Shown: piece after piece, positions 7,213 to 63,914 of the stretch | How the letters are laid out: every line of letters begins with the position of its first letter | Position numbering within the stretch: the first letter of the stretch is position 1 | IMG/VR virus record: IMGVR_UViG_3300028864_000014 | Coordinates: 171,319 to 235,318 of that record | Reading direction: 5' to 3' (one strand) | DNA length: 64,000 bases | Position numbers and translations under genes: made by a program | Notes under the pieces: model-generated | The model's input: the letters and a program-made list of their open reading frames with translations, nothing else | Database searches by the model: none | What the model was told of the DNA's origin: nothing

Positions 7213-7458
7213 ATGGAACATTTAAAAGTTAGTGATAATTTAAAAATAGGTGATAAAATAATCATTTTAAATATAGAAGGAACAAGTTTAATTTATGGTC
7301 AATCTTGTACAATAATTGAGCCTTATCACAGAAGAATTGGATTAATAAGAATAAAAGAATTTCCTGATTTAACTTTATTTATAAGTAGGTTTTCTGATAT
7401 CAAAGTAGTCAGAAAATATAAATTAGAAAAAATAAATAAATATGCCATCAAAAAGTAA
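7213..7458 (+). CDS. RKxKL-tagged micro-ORF (IGDKV, SH3/KOW-like subfamily)
   Basis: LKIGDKIII...SRF..VRKYKLEKI. Confidence 0.75.
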   Translation: MEHLKVSDNLKIGDKIIILNIEGTSLIYGQSCTIIEPYHRRIGLIRIKEFPDLTLFISRFSDIKVVRKYKLEKINKYAIKK

Positions 7459-7621
7459 ATATTTGCCTGATTATTGGAGTAATGGTAATAATAAAGCGAC
7501 TGAAGTATATGAAATAATAAAAAATTCTTCAAATGAAGAAATAGTAGAAGTTTTGAATATGTTTGATATTAAAGATATAGAGAAATTTTTAAGAAATAAA
7601 AAATTAAAAAAATTAAAATGA
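7442..7621 (+). CDS. RKxKL-tagged micro-ORF (DIKDIEK subfamily)
   Basis: Hand-read 59 aa, ends FDIKDIEKFLRNKKLKKLK. Confidence 0.7.
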   Translation: MPSKSKYLPDYWSNGNNKATEVYEIIKNSSNEEIVEVLNMFDIKDIEKFLRNKKLKKLK

Positions 7622-7836
7622 GAGAAATATCAAGAGTTTCTATGTCAGAATCAGAATTATATTCAACTATATCAAGAGCCATTAATTATGACATTGTTGG
7701 AGAAATACCAATTAGAATTGATAATCTTATTAAATATGCATCAAAAGAAGATATAAATGATTCTTTAGAAAAATTTGAAATTAAAGATATTGAGAAATTT
7801 TTAAGAACTAAGAAATTGAAAAATTTAAATAAATAA
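7618..7836 (+). CDS. RKxKL-tagged micro-ORF (DIKDIEK subfamily)
   Basis: FEIKDIEKFLRTKKLKNL. Confidence 0.75.
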   Translation: MREISRVSMSESELYSTISRAINYDIVGEIPIRIDNLIKYASKEDINDSLEKFEIKDIEKFLRTKKLKNLNK

Positions 7837-7838
7837 TT

Positions 7839-8045
7839 ATGTCATTTATGTCATTTGGAATTACAAATTCAATTAGAGATTCAATTAGAGATTATCTGAA
7901 TGTTCATGAAGTCTCAGATAAAATTGGAGTACTTATTGAAAATTTATCAAAAGAAGAAATTAATAATTCTTTAGATAAATTTGATATTAAGGACATTGAA
8001 AAATATTTAAGAAACAAGAAGTTAAATAAATTATTAAATGACTAA
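7839..8045 (+). CDS. RKxKL-tagged micro-ORF (DIKDIEK subfamily)
   Basis: FDIKDIEKYLRNKKLNKL. Confidence 0.75.
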   Translation: MSFMSFGITNSIRDSIRDYLNVHEVSDKIGVLIENLSKEEINNSLDKFDIKDIEKYLRNKKLNKLLND

Positions 8046-8304
8046 TTATAAAGGATATAAAGGTTATGGAAATTATGACTATACTATAGGAGTATGGAAT
8101 TTAGAAGATAATGATTTATATAATATATCATATCAGCTATATTTATTTTCTGACGGAAATGAGAATTATGTGAATATATCTTATGATCAAAATATATTTA
8201 TTAACATGATTGAAATTGGTGATCCTTATTGTAATAAATTTTTAAAAATCGCAAAATCATTAATAAGAAAAGAAAAATTAAATATTATAAATAACTTAAT
8301 ATGA
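8038..8304 (+). CDS. RKxKL-tagged micro-ORF
   Basis: ends IRKEKLNII. Confidence 0.75.
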   Translation: MTNYKGYKGYGNYDYTIGVWNLEDNDLYNISYQLYLFSDGNENYVNISYDQNIFINMIEIGDPYCNKFLKIAKSLIRKEKLNIINNLI

Positions 8305-8540
8305 CAATTCAATTAGAATATGATATTGATAAAATTGCATATGGATTATATTTGATATATTGTAAAAAAAACCAAAATTGGGGTCCAACATTTATATTTG
8401 AGGATTATGTATATATCAAATCACAGATGAAAAATTATACTTCTGAATATGATAAAAAAATAATAGTCGATAACTATAATAAAGCTAATATAATTTTAAG
8501 AAAAATGAAATTAGAAAAATTAGAAAATGATAATAGATAA
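8301..8540 (+). CDS. RKxKL-tagged micro-ORF (DxIAYxLY subfamily)
   Basis: IDKIAYGLY; LRKMKLEKL. Confidence 0.75.
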   Translation: MTIQLEYDIDKIAYGLYLIYCKKNQNWGPTFIFEDYVYIKSQMKNYTSEYDKKIIVDNYNKANIILRKMKLEKLENDNR

Positions 8541-8775
8541 GACAAAAGGTAATTGGTGCAAAGAAGGTGAATCTGATTATATAGATGACATAGCTTTTCA
8601 ATTATATCTAAATTATTATTATAAAGAATATGGAGATTTTAATGATGATTCTCCTCAGAATAATTTTAAAACAGTAAGATATACTCATAATAGCCCGTGG
8701 TATTCATTTTATATTAAATCATTTAAAAATTTAAGAATTGAAAAATTAAAAAAATTAGAAAATGTTAATAGATAA
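8527..8775 (+). CDS. RKxKL-tagged micro-ORF (IDKxxGxW / DDIAFQLY subfamily)
   Basis: IDKTKGNW, DDIAFQLY, LRIEKLKKL. Confidence 0.75.
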   Translation: MIIDKTKGNWCKEGESDYIDDIAFQLYLNYYYKEYGDFNDDSPQNNFKTVRYTHNSPWYSFYIKSFKNLRIEKLKKLENVNR

Positions 8776-9025
8776 AACAATAGGATATTGGTGTCAAAAC
8801 AATGAGTCTGATTGTGTAGATGATATTGCTTTTCAATTATATCTAAATTGTCATTTTGATATATATGGTTCAGTCTCTACTTCTGACCAAAATGACTTTA
8901 TGTGTTTAAGATATTATCATTCTATTTACTATTTATCTGGTTTTTATGAAAAAGCATTTAAAATTTCAAAAAATTTAATAAGAAAAGAAAAATTGAAAAA
9001 GTTGAAATATGAAATCAGTGCATGA
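8762..9025 (+). CDS. RKxKL-tagged micro-ORF (IDKxxGxW / DDIAFQLY subfamily)
   Basis: IDKTIGYW, DDIAFQLY, IRKEKLKKL. Confidence 0.75.
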   Translation: MLIDKTIGYWCQNNESDCVDDIAFQLYLNCHFDIYGSVSTSDQNDFMCLRYYHSIYYLSGFYEKAFKISKNLIRKEKLKKLKYEISA

Positions 9026-9311
9026 AATTGAATATTCAAATATTCACATAGATAAATCAATAGGAAGATGGTCTAAAGATATTCTTTATTCTGAACTTGA
9101 AGATGTGTTTTATCAGATATACGTTCATTGGTATTATAATGAATATATTATTGAAAATGATTCTGAAAATCCTTTATTGTCTCAAACATATTTCATGTCT
9201 TATATGAATACTATTAAAGAAACTAAGAATCACCATTCTTATGATGATTATTATAATAAAGCAACTCACATATTACGAAAAATAAAATTAGAAAAATTGA
9301 AAAATGAATAG
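9009..9311 (+). CDS. RKxKL-tagged micro-ORF (IDKxxGxW subfamily)
   Basis: IDKSIGRW, EDVFYQIY, LRKIKLEKL. Confidence 0.75.
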   Translation: MKSVHEIEYSNIHIDKSIGRWSKDILYSELEDVFYQIYVHWYYNEYIIENDSENPLLSQTYFMSYMNTIKETKNHHSYDDYYNKATHILRKIKLEKLKNE

Positions 9312-9555
9312 TGATTTTAAAATAGGAGATAAGGTATTTTTATGTGATGCAAGAAATTGTTTTACTGCAGAGTTGAATAAACAATATACTATCATTAGCA
9401 TAAAATATGATGATTATAACAAATATACAAAAATAGCATTTAATGAAAATATATCTGAATCAGAAGAATTGTGTTATTTGGATTCCAGAAGATTTAAAAA
9501 AGATATAAAATATGAAAGAAAAATAAAATTAAAAGAAATATTAAATAATGATTAA
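9304..9555 (+). CDS. RKxKL-tagged micro-ORF (IGDKV subfamily)
   Basis: FKIGDKVF...RRFKKDIKYERKIKLKEI. Confidence 0.75.
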   Translation: MNSDFKIGDKVFLCDARNCFTAELNKQYTIISIKYDDYNKYTKIAFNENISESEELCYLDSRRFKKDIKYERKIKLKEILNND

Positions 9556-9775
9556 TAAATTTAAATCAGGAGATAAAGTTATATGTATAGATAATACAAA
9601 TGCTTTTGAATTAATACCTTATATAAAATCATACACAATATCTCATATAAAAACTATTTTTATTTTTTTAGTTGATGAAGAATCCAAATTTCCTTATGTT
9701 TATACTAGATTTGAATTCGATATTAAAACAATGAGAAAGGATAAATTGAAAAAAATACCTAATCATGAAAATTGA
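9548..9775 (+). CDS. RKxKL-tagged micro-ORF (IGDKV subfamily)
   Basis: FKSGDKVI...RFEFDIKTMRKDKLKKI. Confidence 0.75.
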   Translation: MINKFKSGDKVICIDNTNAFELIPYIKSYTISHIKTIFIFLVDEESKFPYVYTRFEFDIKTMRKDKLKKIPNHEN

Positions 9776-10004
9776 AAAAATTAAATGTAATTTAAAAATA
9801 GGAGAACAAATTGTTATAATTAAAGATACTATTGGTAATTCGGAATTAAAAATGAATAAAATTTACATAGTTGAATATATTCATGAATATGTTAATCATA
9901 TTAAGTTAGTAGGATTTGAAGAACGTATATATCAAAGTAAATTATTTAGCAATGATATTAGATTAATAAGAAAAATTAAAATAGAAGAATTAAATGAACA
10001 ATGA
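9765..10004 (+). CDS. RKxKL-tagged micro-ORF (IGDKV subfamily)
   Basis: LKIGEQIV...DIRLIRKIKIEEL. Confidence 0.75.
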   Translation: MKIEKIKCNLKIGEQIVIIKDTIGNSELKMNKIYIVEYIHEYVNHIKLVGFEERIYQSKLFSNDIRLIRKIKIEELNEQ

Positions 10005-12711: not shown

Positions 12712-13003
12712 AAATGGTTAGTGAAACTACAGTAAAGATTGTAATTATTAGATTAATTTTTGATGTTATGATTTGTAGATATAATCAGTGAATGGAGAGT
12801 CCATTGTGGCAAGTAAAGTTGGGGGGATGATATTAATACATAAGAAAGGATGTATTTTTAAACAAGCCCGCTACTGACAGCGGTGGAGGCATGGGTGAAA
12901 ATCCAGAACCAACCTAAAACGAGGCGTTGAATATCTAGTTTATTGAGCAGTTGCAAATGTTTAAGAAAACAAAATTTAGCTACGCCTATCCTTCATACCA
13001 TTT
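12712..13003 (+). ncRNA. candidate large structured ncRNA (about 290 nt)
   Basis: GC-rich ORF-free block; ends pair (AAATGGT..TGAA / TTCA.ACCATTT) then T-run; at least five internal helices. Confidence 0.6.
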
Positions 13004-45342: not shown

Positions 45343-45466
45343 TCACAACCACTTCTCTTCAACTAATTTTTTAATATGATTTAAAAATTAAACACAGAAA
45401 ACGAACTATGCTCAAAATATTGTATGATTATATTATAAAAAAGTTTATTAATCAGATTTATTTTTG

Positions 45467-45474
45467 TATCTTTG
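45467..45474 (+). promoter_or_regulatory. -7 element of Bacteroidota-type promoter driving the Family X array
   Basis: TATCTTTG 18 nt before ATG 45493. Confidence 0.65.
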
Positions 45475-45492
45475 TAAATTAAATATTATCAT

Positions 45493-46266
<774 letters not shown>

Positions 46267-46267
<1 letters not shown>

Positions 46268-46677
46268 TGACAAAAGAAGAATTAAGTGATTTTATATTGG
46301 AGACATTAAAAAAATGCTATAAAGTTAAACATGAGGATTATCCAAGTATAATTTTTTGGATATATGATGAACAATTCATTAGAAAAATTAAATTAGGCAA
46401 AATAAATAATCAAGACATAAAAATTACAAATGAAATTAACGGAACTTGTATATTTCAACAAGATTTTAAAAAATTAAAATTTCGTTGTAATGATGATATT
46501 TGGACTTTTTTATTCAGATACTATTCCGATGATTACTATGATAATCAGAAATTCATGAAAGATATACTAAAAAATATTACTAATTTAAATATGTATTTAC
46601 CAACAATGAATTCATCAACAGCTAATATATCATTGAAAAATTACAAGAAAATAAGTTTATATTTAAATGATGTATAA
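46267..46677 (+). CDS. Family X paralog, array 3/13
   Basis: same motif set. Confidence 0.85.
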
Positions 46678-47065
46678 AAAAGATTTATATGATTGGTTCT
46701 GGAATAAATATAATTCCTGCTATCAAGTTAAAGTAGAATTATATCCAGATAGTGTATTCTTAGTTTATGACGAAAAATATATAAGAAAACTTAAATTGTT
46801 TAAATTAAATAATACAGAAGAGTTAATTTCAATTAATAATGTTGAAGGAACATTTTTATTTAATCAGGATAATAAATTTAGAATTTTATGGCTGAGTGAA
46901 GAATTGTGGAAGTTCTTTGAAAAAAACTATTCATATGACTACTATGATATTCAAAAACTAATAAAAAAACTACTAAAAGATCATCCAATTTTATTCGATT
47001 ATAATCCTTTACCTGGTATGATTAAAAATATATATGAAAATAGTATTATAAAATCAAGATTATAA
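46667..47065 (+). CDS. Family X paralog, array 4/13
   Basis: same motif set. Confidence 0.85.
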   Translation: MMYKKDLYDWFWNKYNSCYQVKVELYPDSVFLVYDEKYIRKLKLFKLNNTEELISINNVEGTFLFNQDNKFRILWLSEELWKFFEKNYSYDYYDIQKLIKKLLKDHPILFDYNPLPGMIKNIYENSIIKSRL

Positions 47066-47985
<920 letters not shown>

Positions 47986-47989
47986 TAAT

Positions 47990-50626
<2,637 letters not shown>

Positions 50627-50634
<8 letters not shown>

Positions 50635-51091
50635 AGAAGAATTATCAAATTGGTTGATTAGCAAAATTTTATATTGCTATCCAGTAGTAGATAAAGAATG
50701 GAATGATTACGTTTTTTATTTCTATGACGAACAATATATTAGAAAACTTAAATTGTTTAAGTTATATAATATAAAAATAACATCGCCAAATCAAGTTAAT
50801 GGAATATGCTTATTTAGTTTAAATATTAAATATAAAATTATTTACTTTCATTATGAATATGTTTGGAAATTCTTTGAAAATAATTATATAAATAATTATA
50901 TACAAATTGAAAAATTTATAACTGAAATTATAAATGATTATAAACAACTAAATAAGTATTCACCAAAAAAAAATTCACAAGGATTTAGATATCCTGAACT
51001 AATAAGAAGTAAGAAAAATTTAGAAATTAGAGAAGCTGATTGGTCATCTCTACTTCCAAGTTCATATAAAAAATTAATAGTATTGAAATAA
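50627..51091 (+). CDS. Family X paralog, array 13/13
   Basis: same motif set. Confidence 0.85.
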
Positions 51092-61074: not shown

Positions 61075-61088
61075 TTATTATTTTTATT

Positions 61089-61100
61089 TCTATATATAAA
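61089..61100 (-). promoter_or_regulatory. putative late promoter TTWATATATA(G/C) (representative copy)
   Basis: TATATA core also at 26088, ~28697, 40718, 43491, 52887, 55321, 57213, 58890, 61405, each shortly upstream of a minus-strand ATG. Confidence 0.7.
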
Positions 61101-61118
61101 ATCTTATATTTGAAGAAC

Positions 61119-61198
61119 AGCCTAATCAATTAGAGACGCGTTCCCCAAAAGTCATCAATTACACTCAAGCCTAATCAATTAGAGACGCGTTCCCCAAA
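61119..61198. repeat. exact 31-bp direct repeat x2, 18-bp spacer
   Basis: AGCCTAATCAATTAGAGACGCGTTCCCCAAA at 61119-49 and 61168-98. Confidence 0.95.
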
Positions 61199-61307
61199 CT
61201 ACCAACTCTGAACACTTGAAATAACCTCACCTTATGACTAACACAACACGCAAAATAAACCCACCATGAAATATATGATGAGCAACTTCAATAGCTTAAA
61301 AATGTTT

Positions 61308-61391
61308 TTAACCTACTACAATAGGATCATCTCCAGGTGAAGTTCCCTTAAATGCCTTAGTAGTCGTACTGGTTGTGATAATGTCTTCCAT
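61308..61391 (-). CDS. 27-aa peptide behind late promoter
   Basis: MEDIITTSTTTKAFKGTSPGDDPIVVG*; TTTATATATAGA ~14 nt upstream. Confidence 0.45.
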   Translation of the reverse strand: MEDIITTSTTTKAFKGTSPGDDPIVVG

Positions 61392-61490
61392 ATTACTTTT
61401 CTTCTATATATAAAAAAACCTTCTATTATACTTCAGATAATTTTTTTATTCCAAAATTTTTTATTACCTTTATAACTTAAATATAATTGT

Positions 61491-62683
<1,193 letters not shown>

Positions 62684-62692
62684 CACTGAGAA

Positions 62693-63035
62693 TAATACCT
62701 CAAATTTTTTTCCCAAAAAAATTTTTTGATTCCTAAATATAACTCTTTATTGTACAAAATTACTTAACATAAAAAAACTCTGAGAAATAACTCTAAAATT
62801 TTTCCCCAAAAAAAAATTTTGAATTTAACATATAGTAACAATTTAACTGGGTAAAATAACTCTAAATTTTTACCAAAAAAAATTTTTTGAATTTCAATAT
62901 CCAACTTAATTTATTTAAAAAATACTCTGATACAAAATACTCAAAAAATTTCCAAAAAAAAAAAATTGATTTCTCATATTTCAATATTTTAACTGGGTAA
63001 AATACCTCTAAAATTTTTCCAAAAAAAAAATTCAA
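62693..63035. repeat. about five degenerate A/T-tract repeats (AATAxCTCTAAAATTTTTCCAAAAAAA)
   Basis: Visible at ~62693, 62788, 62855, 62935, 63001; TTTAACTGGGTAAAATA exact at 62842 and 62988. Confidence 0.75.
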
Positions 63036-63101
63036 ATATTGATATAAAAAACACATGGGGAATTTTTCAAATATTAACATACTCAAATATTAACAATTTT
63101 T

Positions 63102-63307
63102 CGCCATGGCTGCCCTATACCTGCATACACACTCTACACGCGCAAGTCGCTCAACACCATCACCAAGTCTAGTAGGCAAGTGTTCATGAACATCCGACTC
63201 AAGTGCGAATTCGTATTAACACTTAGTAAGTCACGGCCGACTTTCGCGCGTCGTCATCTCCGACAAATGTTCATGAACTTCTTCGCTCCCTCTCTTGATG
63301 GACAACC
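63102..63307 (-). ncRNA. candidate GC-rich structured RNA (or ssDNA hairpin), about 205 nt
   Basis: 12-bp helix 63138-49/63238-51, nested hairpin 63196-232, terminal stem with two G-U on minus strand, two GTTCATGAAC palindromes. Confidence 0.55.
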
Positions 63308-63564
63308 TTGTGAAGAACTCTTTAAAAATTTCTAAGATTTCTATCATGGTACTTAGATACCTTAGCAGCAGTATTGATATGTTGATACCAGATACCACCC
63401 AGTGGATAGCACCCCAGTAGTACCCAAGTATTACACACAACCTGTGTATATCATTCATCCACCATGACAACATAGTTATAACTATGCATAGTATTATAAT
63501 CAATGACATCAGTATAGTTATATGTATAAGCATACAAGTATGATAGACTACTGTATATTATATT

Positions 63565-63830
63565 TATATACATATAAAGATATACTGTGTAGTGTATAGA
63601 AAACAATAAACTTTTTATTAATGTAGATACATATGTATAATAAATTAAACTTATTAATAAAATGTATCTATACATTTTATATAGGGTTGAGTTCACCCGA
63701 ATTAACGCATCAGGAGAGTAAGTTCATTAGACCCTCGTTGAATGATGAAAGAAAAGTATATCACATGATGTGGTGTTACGGAACTATATACATATAAAGA
63801 TATACTGTGTAGTGTATAGAAAACAATAAA
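63565..63830. repeat. exact 46-bp direct repeat x2
   Basis: TATATACATATAAAGATATACTGTGTAGTGTATAGAAAACAATAAA at 63565-610 and 63785-830. Confidence 0.95.
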
Positions 63831-63914
63831 TGCTCTCAACAAATAAAATGTTAAGAGCATTTATTGTGTAGATAATGTTCAGGACATTTATATGTACGTG
63901 TTGTCCTTATGATA

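What the first reader, a model, noticed from the sequence alone, without database searches (positions are those of the whole stretch)
63102..63307. GC-rich structured element with two self-complementary 10-mers at the window end
Seen: roughly half G+C in a very AT-rich genome. Features: 12-bp helix with 2-nt bulge (ACGCGC-GA-AAGTCG / CGACTT-GCGCGT on minus), nested AAGTG/CACTT and GACTTA/TGAGTC stems, closing stem with G-U pairs on minus, and GTTCATGAAC twice (63182, 63269). Inference: an ncRNA able to dimerise or multimerise through palindromic segments (as phi29 pRNA or retroviral DIS do), or a primer/ssDNA hairpin of a replication origin or packaging site.
Basis: partly seen in the sequence, partly recalled or inferred. 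Interest (0 to 1): 0.7.

Follow-up and report, generated by a model that had tools for sequence, protein, structure and literature searches.

The report
Conserved GC-rich non-coding element, huge phage
A roughly 210-250-base G+C-rich stretch in a long gene-free gap of a very AT-rich, roughly 0.7-Mb peat phage codes for no protein yet is at least as well conserved as the tail-sheath gene, so it is most likely a new structured RNA gene of unknown function, though no transcript has been seen.

Summary
Window 63097-63300 is 49% G+C in a 24% G+C genome. GTTCATGAAC occurs only twice in 235 kb, both times here. The 12-bp bulged helix and the 12-bp helix formed by the two palindromes are each rarer than chance (1 of 300 and 0 of 300 shuffles).

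The genome is a fragment of a huge tailed phage from peat (contractile sheath, baseplate spike, 16 tRNAs; estimated about 0.7 Mb). It continues past the window end.

Three sequence variants exist (A, B, C), plus partial D. Across A-C the core is gapless and 86-90% identical. Flanks are 64-76% identical and the tail-sheath gene 82-86%. Every frame has stops, and substitutions show no codon periodicity.

Substitutions avoid the three helices read from sequence A alone (3 of 66 paired against 23 of 75 unpaired columns, p=5e-5). Most changes inside helices give G·U pairs on the minus strand only.

No Rfam family, tRNA or tmRNA matches. No compensatory double change exists, and no RNA run was listed.

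Best reading (about 0.5): an independently transcribed structured RNA, probably from the minus strand, with a pseudoknot-type core.

Main rival (about 0.2): a DNA site such as an origin or a protein-binding site, next to five locus-specific tandem repeats.

Dimerisation through the palindromes is not supported, because they pair with each other.

The parts
63097..63300 (-). Strictly conserved G+C-rich core. Looser conservation extends to about 63345. The strand is inferred, not shown.
   Evidence: 49% G+C. Gapless; 86.2, 90.1 and 87.7% pairwise identity among variants A, B and C, against 64-76% in 63301-63345 and 74-76% over the wider alignable non-coding flanks. Stops in all six frames of all three variants. 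Substitutions by codon phase are 20/17/14. No Rfam, tRNA or tmRNA match.
63182..63194 (-). Helix P, arm 1. Contains the first GTTCATGAAC; the 12-nt palindrome TGTTCATGAACA lies at 63181-63192.
   Evidence: Pairs with 63266-63278. There are 12 Watson-Crick pairs plus one U·G on the minus strand, invariant in A, B and C. A perfect 12-bp stem appeared in 0 of 300 shuffles.
63266..63278 (-). Helix P, arm 2. Contains the second GTTCATGAAC.
   Evidence: As for arm 1. In variants C and D the change 63279 T>A adds a further pair with 63181.
63138..63149 (-).
   Evidence: Pairs with 63238-63251 around a 2-nt bulge. 97.2% of cells are paired on the minus strand and 88.9% on the plus strand. A 6+6 bulged helix appeared in 1 of 300 shuffles. 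It crosses helix P, so both together form a pseudoknot.
63238..63251 (-). Helix R, arm 2, with the bulge at 63244-63245.
   Evidence: Changes at 63140 (B, C), 63239 (C, D) and 63246 (D) give G·U on the minus strand. 63238 (B) breaks the terminal pair.
63197..63227 (-). Nested hairpin Hc: ACT-C-AAGTG, a loop, then CACTT-AGT.
   Evidence: Eight pairs, invariant in all three variants. The changes (63206-63208, 63215) lie between the arms.
63232..63239 (.). Hypervariable 8-nt patch, flanked by the invariant AAGT (63228-63231) and ACTT (63240-63243).
   Evidence: All eight columns differ among A, B and C, while the flanks are invariant. Read as an unconstrained loop or linker.
63108..63115 (-). Closing stem, 3' arm. 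Pairs with 63300-63307. Two to three of its pairs are G·U, so it forms on the minus strand only.
   Evidence: 91.7% of cells are paired. There is one wobble-compatible change and one position broken in B and C.
63300..63307 (-). Closing stem, 5' arm.
62686..63040 (.). Five tandem repeats, 66-94 nt apart. Each carries an A4T5-CC-A8T4 inverted A/T tract followed by TTGA.
   Evidence: families D1-D3. The motif occurs only at this locus in 235 kb (4 of the 5 repeats fit the strict pattern). The same kind of array precedes the core in variants B and C.
63551..63584 (-). Weak match to the phage's own promoter-like motif (T-run, TATATA[AT]A, A-run). A possible promoter for a minus-strand transcript.
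   Evidence: Position-weight score 9.6, where 101 sites in the genome score 12 or more. No comparable site lies upstream on the plus strand. Inferred only.
63823..63867 (-). Terminator-like hairpin that ends the minus-strand LRR genes lying beyond the window end.
   Evidence: 19 pairs, then a T-rich tail. Together with the plus-strand genes ending at 62683, it shows that the element sits alone in a 1.3-kb convergent gap.

Best explanation
The element is the gene of a previously undescribed structured non-coding RNA, carried by a small clade of huge (about 0.7 Mb), very AT-rich tailed phages from peat.

The RNA is most likely read from the minus strand as its own transcription unit in a 1.3-kb convergent gene-free gap.

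Its conserved core (about 63108-63307) is built from:
- a G·U-containing closing stem;
- a 12-13-bp helix (P), made by the two copies of the palindromic 12-mer pairing with each other;
- a nested 8-bp hairpin (Hc).
An 8-nt hypervariable patch acts as an unconstrained loop or linker.

No complementary target exists in the 244 kb available, and long single-stranded blocks are invariant. I therefore infer that it works as a protein-binding or scaffold RNA rather than as an antisense regulator.

Shown: conservation, absence of coding, the helices and their constraint.
Inferred: transcription, strand, RNA ends and function.
For: 1. Composition. 49% G+C in a 24% G+C genome. In this genome two of the five most G+C-rich gene-free gaps are tRNA arrays. 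Long G+C-enriched intergenic regions are an established predictor of structured RNA genes (PMC8632094).

2. Purifying selection without coding. The core is 86-90% identical and gapless among three variants. By comparison, 63301-63345 is 64-76% identical, the alignable neighbouring genes 65-84%, and the tail-sheath gene 82-86%. A near-identical strain has 0 changes in 63040-63353 but 6 listed in 63354-63388. All frames of all variants have stops. There is no 3-periodicity.

3. The helices, read from sequence A alone, are rarer than chance. Substitutions in B and C avoid them: 3 of 66 paired columns vary against 23 of 75 unpaired (p=5e-5). Without the palindrome helix it is 3 of 40 (p=0.005).

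4. Strand. 99.0% of helix cells pair on the minus strand and 92.9% on the plus strand. Three of the four substituted sites inside helix R (63140 in B and C, 63239 in C and D, 63246 in D) give G·U on the minus strand and A·C on the plus strand. The closing stem exists only on the minus strand. Alignment-level folding gives z=-4.1 and structure conservation index (SCI) 0.91 on the minus strand, against z=-2.1 and SCI 0.78 on the plus strand.

5. Setting. The element is single-copy. It lies between the ends of convergent genes, with a terminator-like hairpin on one side. In variant B it keeps its non-coding surroundings although the flanking genes differ.
Against: 1. No pair shows a change on both sides, so there is no true covariation. 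Only three full variants exist.

2. Single-sequence folding energy of the whole core is not significant. Substitutions are not depleted from, and mostly break, the full minimum-free-energy structures. Only the few named helices are supported, not a global fold.

3. The central domain folds equally well on both strands. DNA hairpins or plus-strand RNA therefore remain possible.

4. No RNA run could be listed. No convincing promoter or terminator was found; the best promoter-like site scores only 9.6, and the hairpin after the core has no conserved U-tail.

5. The two palindrome copies also share non-palindromic flanks (CAA..TC, family D19). That is what two copies of one protein-binding site would look like.
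Confidence: 0.5

Rival explanations
1. A cis-acting DNA site, not an RNA. It could be a replication origin, a partition or condensation site, or a packaging site. The two TGTTCATGAACA palindromes would be operators for a dimeric DNA-binding protein. The five upstream tandem repeats, and the further repeats downstream, would be iterons or bending and unwinding elements.
For: Two identical 10-12-bp perfect palindromes, unique in 235 kb and sharing direct-repeat flanks. Five A/T-tract tandem repeats found only at this locus. More repeats downstream: a 46-nt direct repeat and a 12-nt unit, which variant B expands to a 10-copy minisatellite. A 1.3-1.8-kb gene-free region is kept in all variants. 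GC skew changes sign here. The helices are Watson-Crick on both strands.
Against: About 200 contiguous, gapless, G+C-rich conserved bases are far more than binding sites need. An unwinding region would be A+T-rich. GC skew follows gene direction all along the contig and turns many times, so the turn here is not special. There is no DnaA-box cluster. No ParB, integrase or obvious initiator is in the 235 kb held. The G·U asymmetry of substitutions has no meaning for duplex DNA.
Confidence: 0.2
2. The same element is transcribed from the plus strand, or from both strands as a sense/antisense pair as in plasmid copy-control RNAs. The sharp left boundary at 63097 would then be the transcription start, and the upstream repeats would be activator or promoter-proximal sites.
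For: The left edge of conservation is sharp and follows an A/T-rich stretch. Helices P, R and Hc are Watson-Crick, and the central domain is as stable on the plus strand (z -2.2 to -4.7). The repeat array lies upstream in this direction.
Against: There is no match to the phage's own promoter-like motif, nor a conserved sigma-70-like site, upstream on the plus strand. On the plus strand seven helix cells become mismatches, and the closing stem is lost. Alignment-level folding is weaker (z -2.1, SCI 0.78). The 5' third is C+A-rich and unpaired.
Confidence: 0.15
3. A recombination or attachment site, or a captured piece of host DNA. Its host-like G+C content and conservation would come from identity with a host target.
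For: A G+C-rich patch in A+T-rich non-coding DNA, flanked by repeats, resembles attP cores with arm-type sites.
Against: No tyrosine integrase in the 235 kb. An 18-mer of the core found only this phage clade in 241 million metagenome records, including the source peat samples. The double-palindrome pattern found no related sequence in 185,579 species genomes. No Rfam match to a tRNA, tmRNA or other host RNA gene.
Confidence: 0.05
4. No function: an assembly chimera, a decaying pseudogene, or a small or recoded protein-coding gene.
For: A 100-codon minus-strand ORF (63231-63533), a 27-codon ORF (63106-63189) and an 83-codon open frame on the plus strand exist in variant A.
Against: The same sequence with the same junctions is assembled independently in many runs and contigs. 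The core is more conserved than its flanks and at least as conserved as the sheath gene. The ORFs are interrupted in B and C by all three stop codons, so no recoding rescues them. Changes in the 27-codon ORF are mostly non-synonymous (positions 1/2/3 = 6/5/2), and C has a premature stop.
Confidence: 0.03

Closest known systems
Orphan structured non-coding RNA candidates found as long, G+C-enriched intergenic regions (the GC-IGR approach of the Breaker laboratory, PMC8632094); also the large phage-associated RNAs GOLLD and ROOL (recalled from my own knowledge)
   Same: A long gene-free region, G+C well above the genome average, nucleotide-level conservation without coding, and conserved helices. 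It sits in a phage genome that also carries tRNA arrays.
   Different: No sequence or structure match to any of the 4227 Rfam families, GOLLD and ROOL included. It is much smaller than those. It is known from only 3-4 close variants, so it lacks the covariation that supports those families.
phi29 pRNA (packaging RNA) and retroviral dimer-initiation hairpins
   Same: A phage- or virus-encoded structured RNA of 120-200 nt in which self-complementary sequence could in principle link molecules.
   Different: Here the palindromes occur twice and pair with each other inside one molecule. They are helix arms, not loop sequences. There is no Rfam pRNA match. The phage has a contractile tail and a genome of hundreds of kb, unlike phi29-type podoviruses.
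Iteron-type replication origins of phages and plasmids (lambda ori, P1 oriR, P4 ori/crr; recalled from my own knowledge)
   Same: A gene-free region with tandem direct repeats, A/T tracts and palindromes, with a local turn of GC skew.
   Different: The repeats are 66-94 nt apart rather than about 20. The best-conserved part is G+C-rich and 200 nt long. There are no DnaA boxes and no adjacent initiator gene. The skew turn is explained by gene direction.
H-type pseudoknotted RNAs with long stems (for example the tmRNA pseudoknot domains)
   Same: Two conserved helices of about 12 bp that cross each other, with connecting loops of 30, 44 and 14 nt, long enough to span them.
   Different: ARAGORN and the Rfam tmRNA models do not match. 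There is no tRNA-like end and no tag reading frame. The pseudoknot is inferred from two individually supported helices, not demonstrated.

Membership tests
phi29-type pRNA | Match to the pRNA covariance model (Rfam) | tested here: not met
   No hit at the gathering threshold or at E up to 10 in the element.
phi29-type pRNA | Encoded by a small phi29-like podovirus with a terminal-protein genome | tested here: not met
   Contractile tail sheath of 1200 aa, baseplate spike, and a fragment of 235 kb or more.
phi29-type pRNA | Intermolecular loop-loop pairing that builds a ring on the packaging motor | not testable with these tools
   Sequence shows the palindromes as arms of an intramolecular helix. 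Multimerisation would need native gels.
Retron msr/msd | Reverse transcriptase gene next to the non-coding RNA | tested here: not met
   No RVT_1 match in the 235 kb. The neighbours are LRR and small paralogous genes. The genome is incomplete.
tRNA / tmRNA | Cloverleaf or tRNA-like domain recognised by ARAGORN or Rfam | tested here: not met
   ARAGORN finds none in the window, although it finds 16 tRNAs elsewhere in the genome. No Rfam match.
Structured non-coding RNA (generic) | Nucleotide-level conservation without coding potential | tested here: met
Structured non-coding RNA (generic) | Helices supported by compensatory (two-sided) changes | tested here: inconclusive
   No two-sided changes among the three variants. 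Substitutions avoid the helices, and the one-sided changes are mostly wobble-compatible on the minus strand.
Structured non-coding RNA (generic) | A discrete transcript | not testable with these tools
   No RNA run was listed for the stretch.
Iteron-type replication origin | Tandem direct repeats and an A+T-rich region | tested here: met
   Five locus-specific repeats at 62686-63040.
Iteron-type replication origin | DnaA boxes or an adjacent initiator gene | tested here: not met
   DnaA-box-like 9-mers are at chance level, and the two in the intergenic gap lie more than 500 nt from the core. The neighbouring genes are LRR and small paralogues.
Iteron-type replication origin | Genome-scale strand-composition switch at the site | tested here: inconclusive
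   There is a local turn, but skew turns many times with gene direction, and the genome is only about a third complete.
parS / ParB centromere | ParB-family protein encoded by the element's genome | tested here: not met
   No ParB_N match in the 235 kb. The likeness of TGTTCATGAACA to the chromosomal parS palindrome is a recollection, not a test.
attP site | Integrase gene, and identity with a host target | tested here: not met
   No Phage_integrase match. No bacterial sequence shares the core.

The most novel reading that the evidence does not exclude
The element is the founding member of a new class of pseudoknotted RNA specific to ~0.7-Mb 'megaphages'. Its two palindromic 12-mers and the crossing 12-bp helix form a compact core that recruits a phage or host protein. 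With the adjacent locus-specific repeat array it could form an RNA-dependent control point, for example an RNA-primed or RNA-regulated origin.
Probability: 0.3. Interest if true: 0.6.

Novelty: new member of a known kind. Interest (0 to 1): 0.45.

Why it matters
Huge phages carry tRNAs, tmRNAs and CRISPR arrays, but few other non-coding RNAs have been described for them. Here a 200-nt RNA-like element is held at least as constant as the tail sheath, with no match in Rfam.

That would mark a function these ~0.7-Mb phages cannot lose. It also gives a concrete, short target for transcriptomics, structure probing and pull-downs.

If instead it is the DNA of an origin or a protein-binding site, it would be one of the first cis-acting sites located in this uncultured clade.

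Either way the finding is narrow: one clade, no host and no transcript evidence yet.

Tried and rejected
**Known RNA families.** Rfam was run on the whole window (gathering threshold) and, permissively, on 1.4 kb and on 261 nt. It gave only chance-level microRNA and C/D-snoRNA hits with E of 2 or more in the element. ARAGORN found nothing here.

**Coding.** Six-frame reading of A, B and C, codon-phase counts and the 27-codon ORF 63106-63189 were all rejected. All three stop codons occur in frame, so no alternative code applies.

**Wider family.**
- Exact-word scans of IMG/VR used four different anchors.
- One 18-mer scan covered the metagenome contigs and one double-palindrome scan the species genomes.
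- Only variants A-C came back. The other hits were chance matches or unrelated 21-nt coding repeats in Pedobacter and others.
- An nhmmer profile found no second copy in the genome or in any fetched locus.
- Sixteen records of related phages, reached through the tail sheath, do not contain it. They are fragments far from the locus.

**Other checks.**
- Phage record collection: no match.
- RNA evidence: no RNA run was listed. The two read-laying runs gave only DNA contigs.
- Antisense target: no complementarity longer than 13 nt elsewhere in 244 kb. The hypervariable loop has no partner.
- Origin tests: DnaA boxes at chance level; GC skew uninformative.
- ParB, integrase, reverse transcriptase, NCLDV capsid and family-B polymerase were not found in the fragment.
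- Bacteroidota-type -7 promoter motif: no clear enrichment and none near the element.
- Terminator after the core on the minus strand: a CCATGG-closed hairpin forms in all variants but without a conserved U-tail.
- My first guess of a giant eukaryotic virus (AAAATTGA-like motifs, collagen and LRR genes) was dropped after the sheath and baseplate matches.

Full report
**What the window is.**
- The 64-kb window is the last part of a 235,318-nt viral record (G000) with 24.4% G+C. The record is classed as a linear fragment, about 33% complete.
- It is a tailed phage, not a giant eukaryotic virus. It has a 1200-aa tail sheath and a baseplate spike with an OB domain and an M23 peptidase.
- It also encodes ribonucleotide reductase, an Mre11/Rad50-type fusion, ClpB and NAD-ligase, and 16 tRNA genes in two arrays.
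- There is no NCLDV capsid match.
- The completeness figures (235 kb = 33%; a relative's 98.8 kb = 14%) imply genomes near 0.7 Mb.
- The DNA stands in many peat metagenomes and one glacier metagenome.
- Genes lack Shine-Dalgarno sequences. Many carry a T-run/TATATATA/A-run motif 10-40 nt before the start codon.

**Checking the observation.**
- G+C reaches 0.49 in 63100-63299.
- GTTCATGAAC starts at 63182 and 63269. It occurs nowhere else in the window (expected 0.07) or in the 235 kb.
- The bulged 12-bp helix joins 63138-63149 to 63238-63251. The nested hairpin joins 63197-63205 to 63220-63227. A closing stem that needs G·U pairs joins 63108-63115 to 63300-63307 on the minus strand.
- In 300 dinucleotide-preserving shuffles of the core, no perfect 12-bp stem appeared and a 6+6 bulged helix appeared once.
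- Against this, the folding energy of the whole element is ordinary (z -1.35 and -1.0; -0.2 to -2.4 for A, B and C).
- Only the central 111 nt between the palindromes stands out (z -2.0 to -4.7), and it does so on both strands.
- The 'window end' is a contig end. Other assemblies of the identical phage continue for 2.5 to 9 kb, and the junctions are reproduced independently. This is not a chimera.

**Relatives.**
- Exact-word scans found the element in three sequence variants only. These are A (the window and five further contigs), B (L006, L008, L010, L037) and C (L020, L034, L041).
- Laid contigs show a fourth partial variant D, and a near-identical strain A'.
- All other pattern matches were chance or unrelated coding repeats.
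- The element is single-copy.

**It is conserved and does not code.**
- The three variants align without a gap from 63097 to about 63345.
- Pairwise identity in 63097-63300 is 86.2, 90.1 and 87.7%. It falls to 64-76% in the next 45 nt and to about 74-76% over the wider alignable non-coding flanks, which also carry insertions and deletions.
- Neighbouring genes align at 65-84%.
- The tail-sheath gene of the two closest non-identical relatives is 85.6% and 82.1% identical.
- Strain A' has no change in 63040-63353 but six listed changes in 63354-63388.
- Every frame of every variant has stops, of all three kinds.
- The 51 variable positions fall 20/17/14 by codon phase.
- The small ORF at 63106-63189 changes mostly at first and second codon positions and is cut short in C. 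The constraint is therefore on the nucleotides.

**Structure.**
- Consensus folding gave no pair with changes on both sides, so there is no true covariation.
- Substitutions are not depleted from the full minimum-free-energy structures, and they mostly break them. A global fold is therefore not supported.
- The few helices that can be read from sequence A alone fare differently.
  - The two palindrome copies are complementary to each other over 12 Watson-Crick pairs, plus one U·G on the minus strand, and are invariant (helix P).
- Between 63138 and 63278, 3 of 66 helix columns vary against 23 of 75 other columns (p=5e-5). Without helix P it is 3 of 40 (p=0.005).
- All eight positions 63232-63239 vary, while the flanking AAGT and ACTT are invariant, as expected of a loop or linker.
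- Helices P and R cross, so if both form the core is a pseudoknot. Its connecting stretches are 30, 44 and 14 nt.

**Which strand.**
- The named helices pair in 99.0% of cells on the minus strand and 92.9% on the plus strand.
- Of the four substituted sites inside helix R, three give G·U on the minus strand and A·C on the plus strand: 63140 in B and C, 63239 in C and D, and 63246 in D. The fourth (63238 in B) breaks a terminal pair.
- The closing stem exists only on the minus strand.
- Alignment-level folding against column shuffles gives z=-4.1 (SCI 0.91) on the minus strand and z=-2.1 (SCI 0.78) on the plus strand.
- A weak match to the phage's promoter-like motif lies on the minus strand at 63584-63551. 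There is none upstream on the plus strand.
- This favours the minus strand, but only modestly.

**Setting.**
- The element lies in a 1.3-kb convergent gap. Plus-strand genes end at 62683 and minus-strand LRR genes end just past the window. The LRR genes are followed by a terminator-like hairpin at 63867-63823.
- To its left are five tandem repeats (62686-63040) whose A/T-tract motif occurs nowhere else in 235 kb.
- To its right are a duplicated 46-nt module and short repeats. One of these is a 10-copy minisatellite in variant B.
- Variant B keeps this non-coding block although its flanking genes differ.
- Two of this genome's other G+C-rich gene-free gaps are tRNA arrays. Long G+C-rich intergenic regions are a recognised predictor of structured RNAs (PMC8632094).

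**Interpretation.**
- The best reading (about 0.5) is a new structured non-coding RNA, probably minus-strand, with a pseudoknot-type core. Its function is unknown.
- No complementary target longer than 13 nt exists in the 244 kb held, and long unpaired blocks are invariant. I therefore lean to a protein-binding role.
- The main rival (about 0.2) is a DNA site: an origin, or a binding site for a dimeric protein, with the repeats as iterons.
  - For it: the unique palindromes with shared flanks, and the repeat-rich gap.
  - Against it: the length and G+C richness of the conserved block; the absence of DnaA boxes, ParB, integrase or an initiator; and a GC-skew turn that is explained by gene direction.
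- Plus-strand or two-strand transcription (about 0.15), an attachment site (about 0.05), and no function or coding (about 0.03) follow.
The pRNA, retron, tRNA and tmRNA memberships each fail a tested defining feature.

**Verdict.** This is a real, conserved, non-coding and probably RNA-level element with no known family. It is limited to one phage clade and is without transcript or covariation evidence. Interest is moderate (0.45).

Noticed in passing
G000:2118-3597 (minus) and G000:137519-137972 (plus), outside the window: Two tRNA arrays: 11 tRNAs (Arg, Thr x3, Val x2, Gly x2, Ala, Pro, Arg) and 5 tRNA-Leu. Several are unusually long for their type (Gly 86-87 nt, Pro 88, Arg 94, Thr 85), which may mean introns or inexact ARAGORN calls.
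   Followed up: partly
window 62686-63040: Five tandem repeats, 66-94 nt apart. Each has an A4T5-CC-A8T4 inverted A/T tract followed by TTGA. The motif is found only here in 235 kb, and it is present before the element in variants B and C too.
   Followed up: partly
window 61119-61149 and 61168-61198: A perfect 31-nt direct repeat (it begins AGCCTAATCAATTAG and contains a CTAAT..ATTAG inverted repeat). It lies in a G+C-enriched (0.36-0.37) divergent gene-free gap, 61075-61490.
   Followed up: no
window ~12780-12950: Another G+C-rich (up to 0.43) stretch without an ORF of 75 codons or more. It has no Rfam match at the gathering threshold and could be a second non-coding RNA candidate.
   Followed up: no
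window 63565-63610 and 63785-63830: A perfect 46-nt direct repeat. Each copy follows a hairpin (63624-63670 and 63823-63867). It looks like a duplicated terminator module for the minus-strand LRR genes.
   Followed up: partly
L010:1804-1924 (variant B); window 63901-63912 in A: The 12-nt unit TTGTCCTTATGA is present once in A. In variant B it is expanded to 10 perfect tandem copies, plus 3 more, inside a 75-nt higher-order repeat.
   Followed up: partly
whole record G000: Genes almost never have a Shine-Dalgarno sequence (AGGA in 5 of 279). About a quarter carry a T-run/TATATA[AT]A/A-run motif within 70 nt of the start codon, mostly 10-40 nt before it, a likely phage promoter. SD-less initiation hints at a Bacteroidota-like host, but the Bacteroidota -7 motif is not clearly enriched.
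   Followed up: partly
window 45456-50928, 61491-62683; L005:3816-5184 and 7340-9838: Large paralogous gene families. They include about 20 small genes starting MNxEEL..W..NKF.SCYPV, many leucine-rich-repeat proteins ending KFNI or KFNL, and tail-fibre-like genes starting M[IV]NIQLASEEWV.
   Followed up: no
L005 start (= window 63134); L008 end (= window 63296): Two independent assemblies break inside the element. Several large contigs end within 1 kb of it. The likely causes are that variants A-D co-occur in the same samples and share the conserved core, and that the LRR paralogues start just beyond it.
   Followed up: yes
loci L078-L108: A wide clade of related phages, with tail sheath 46-86% identical at the protein level, occurs in many other metagenomes. 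Their CheckV completeness values also imply genomes of about 0.7 Mb.
   Followed up: partly
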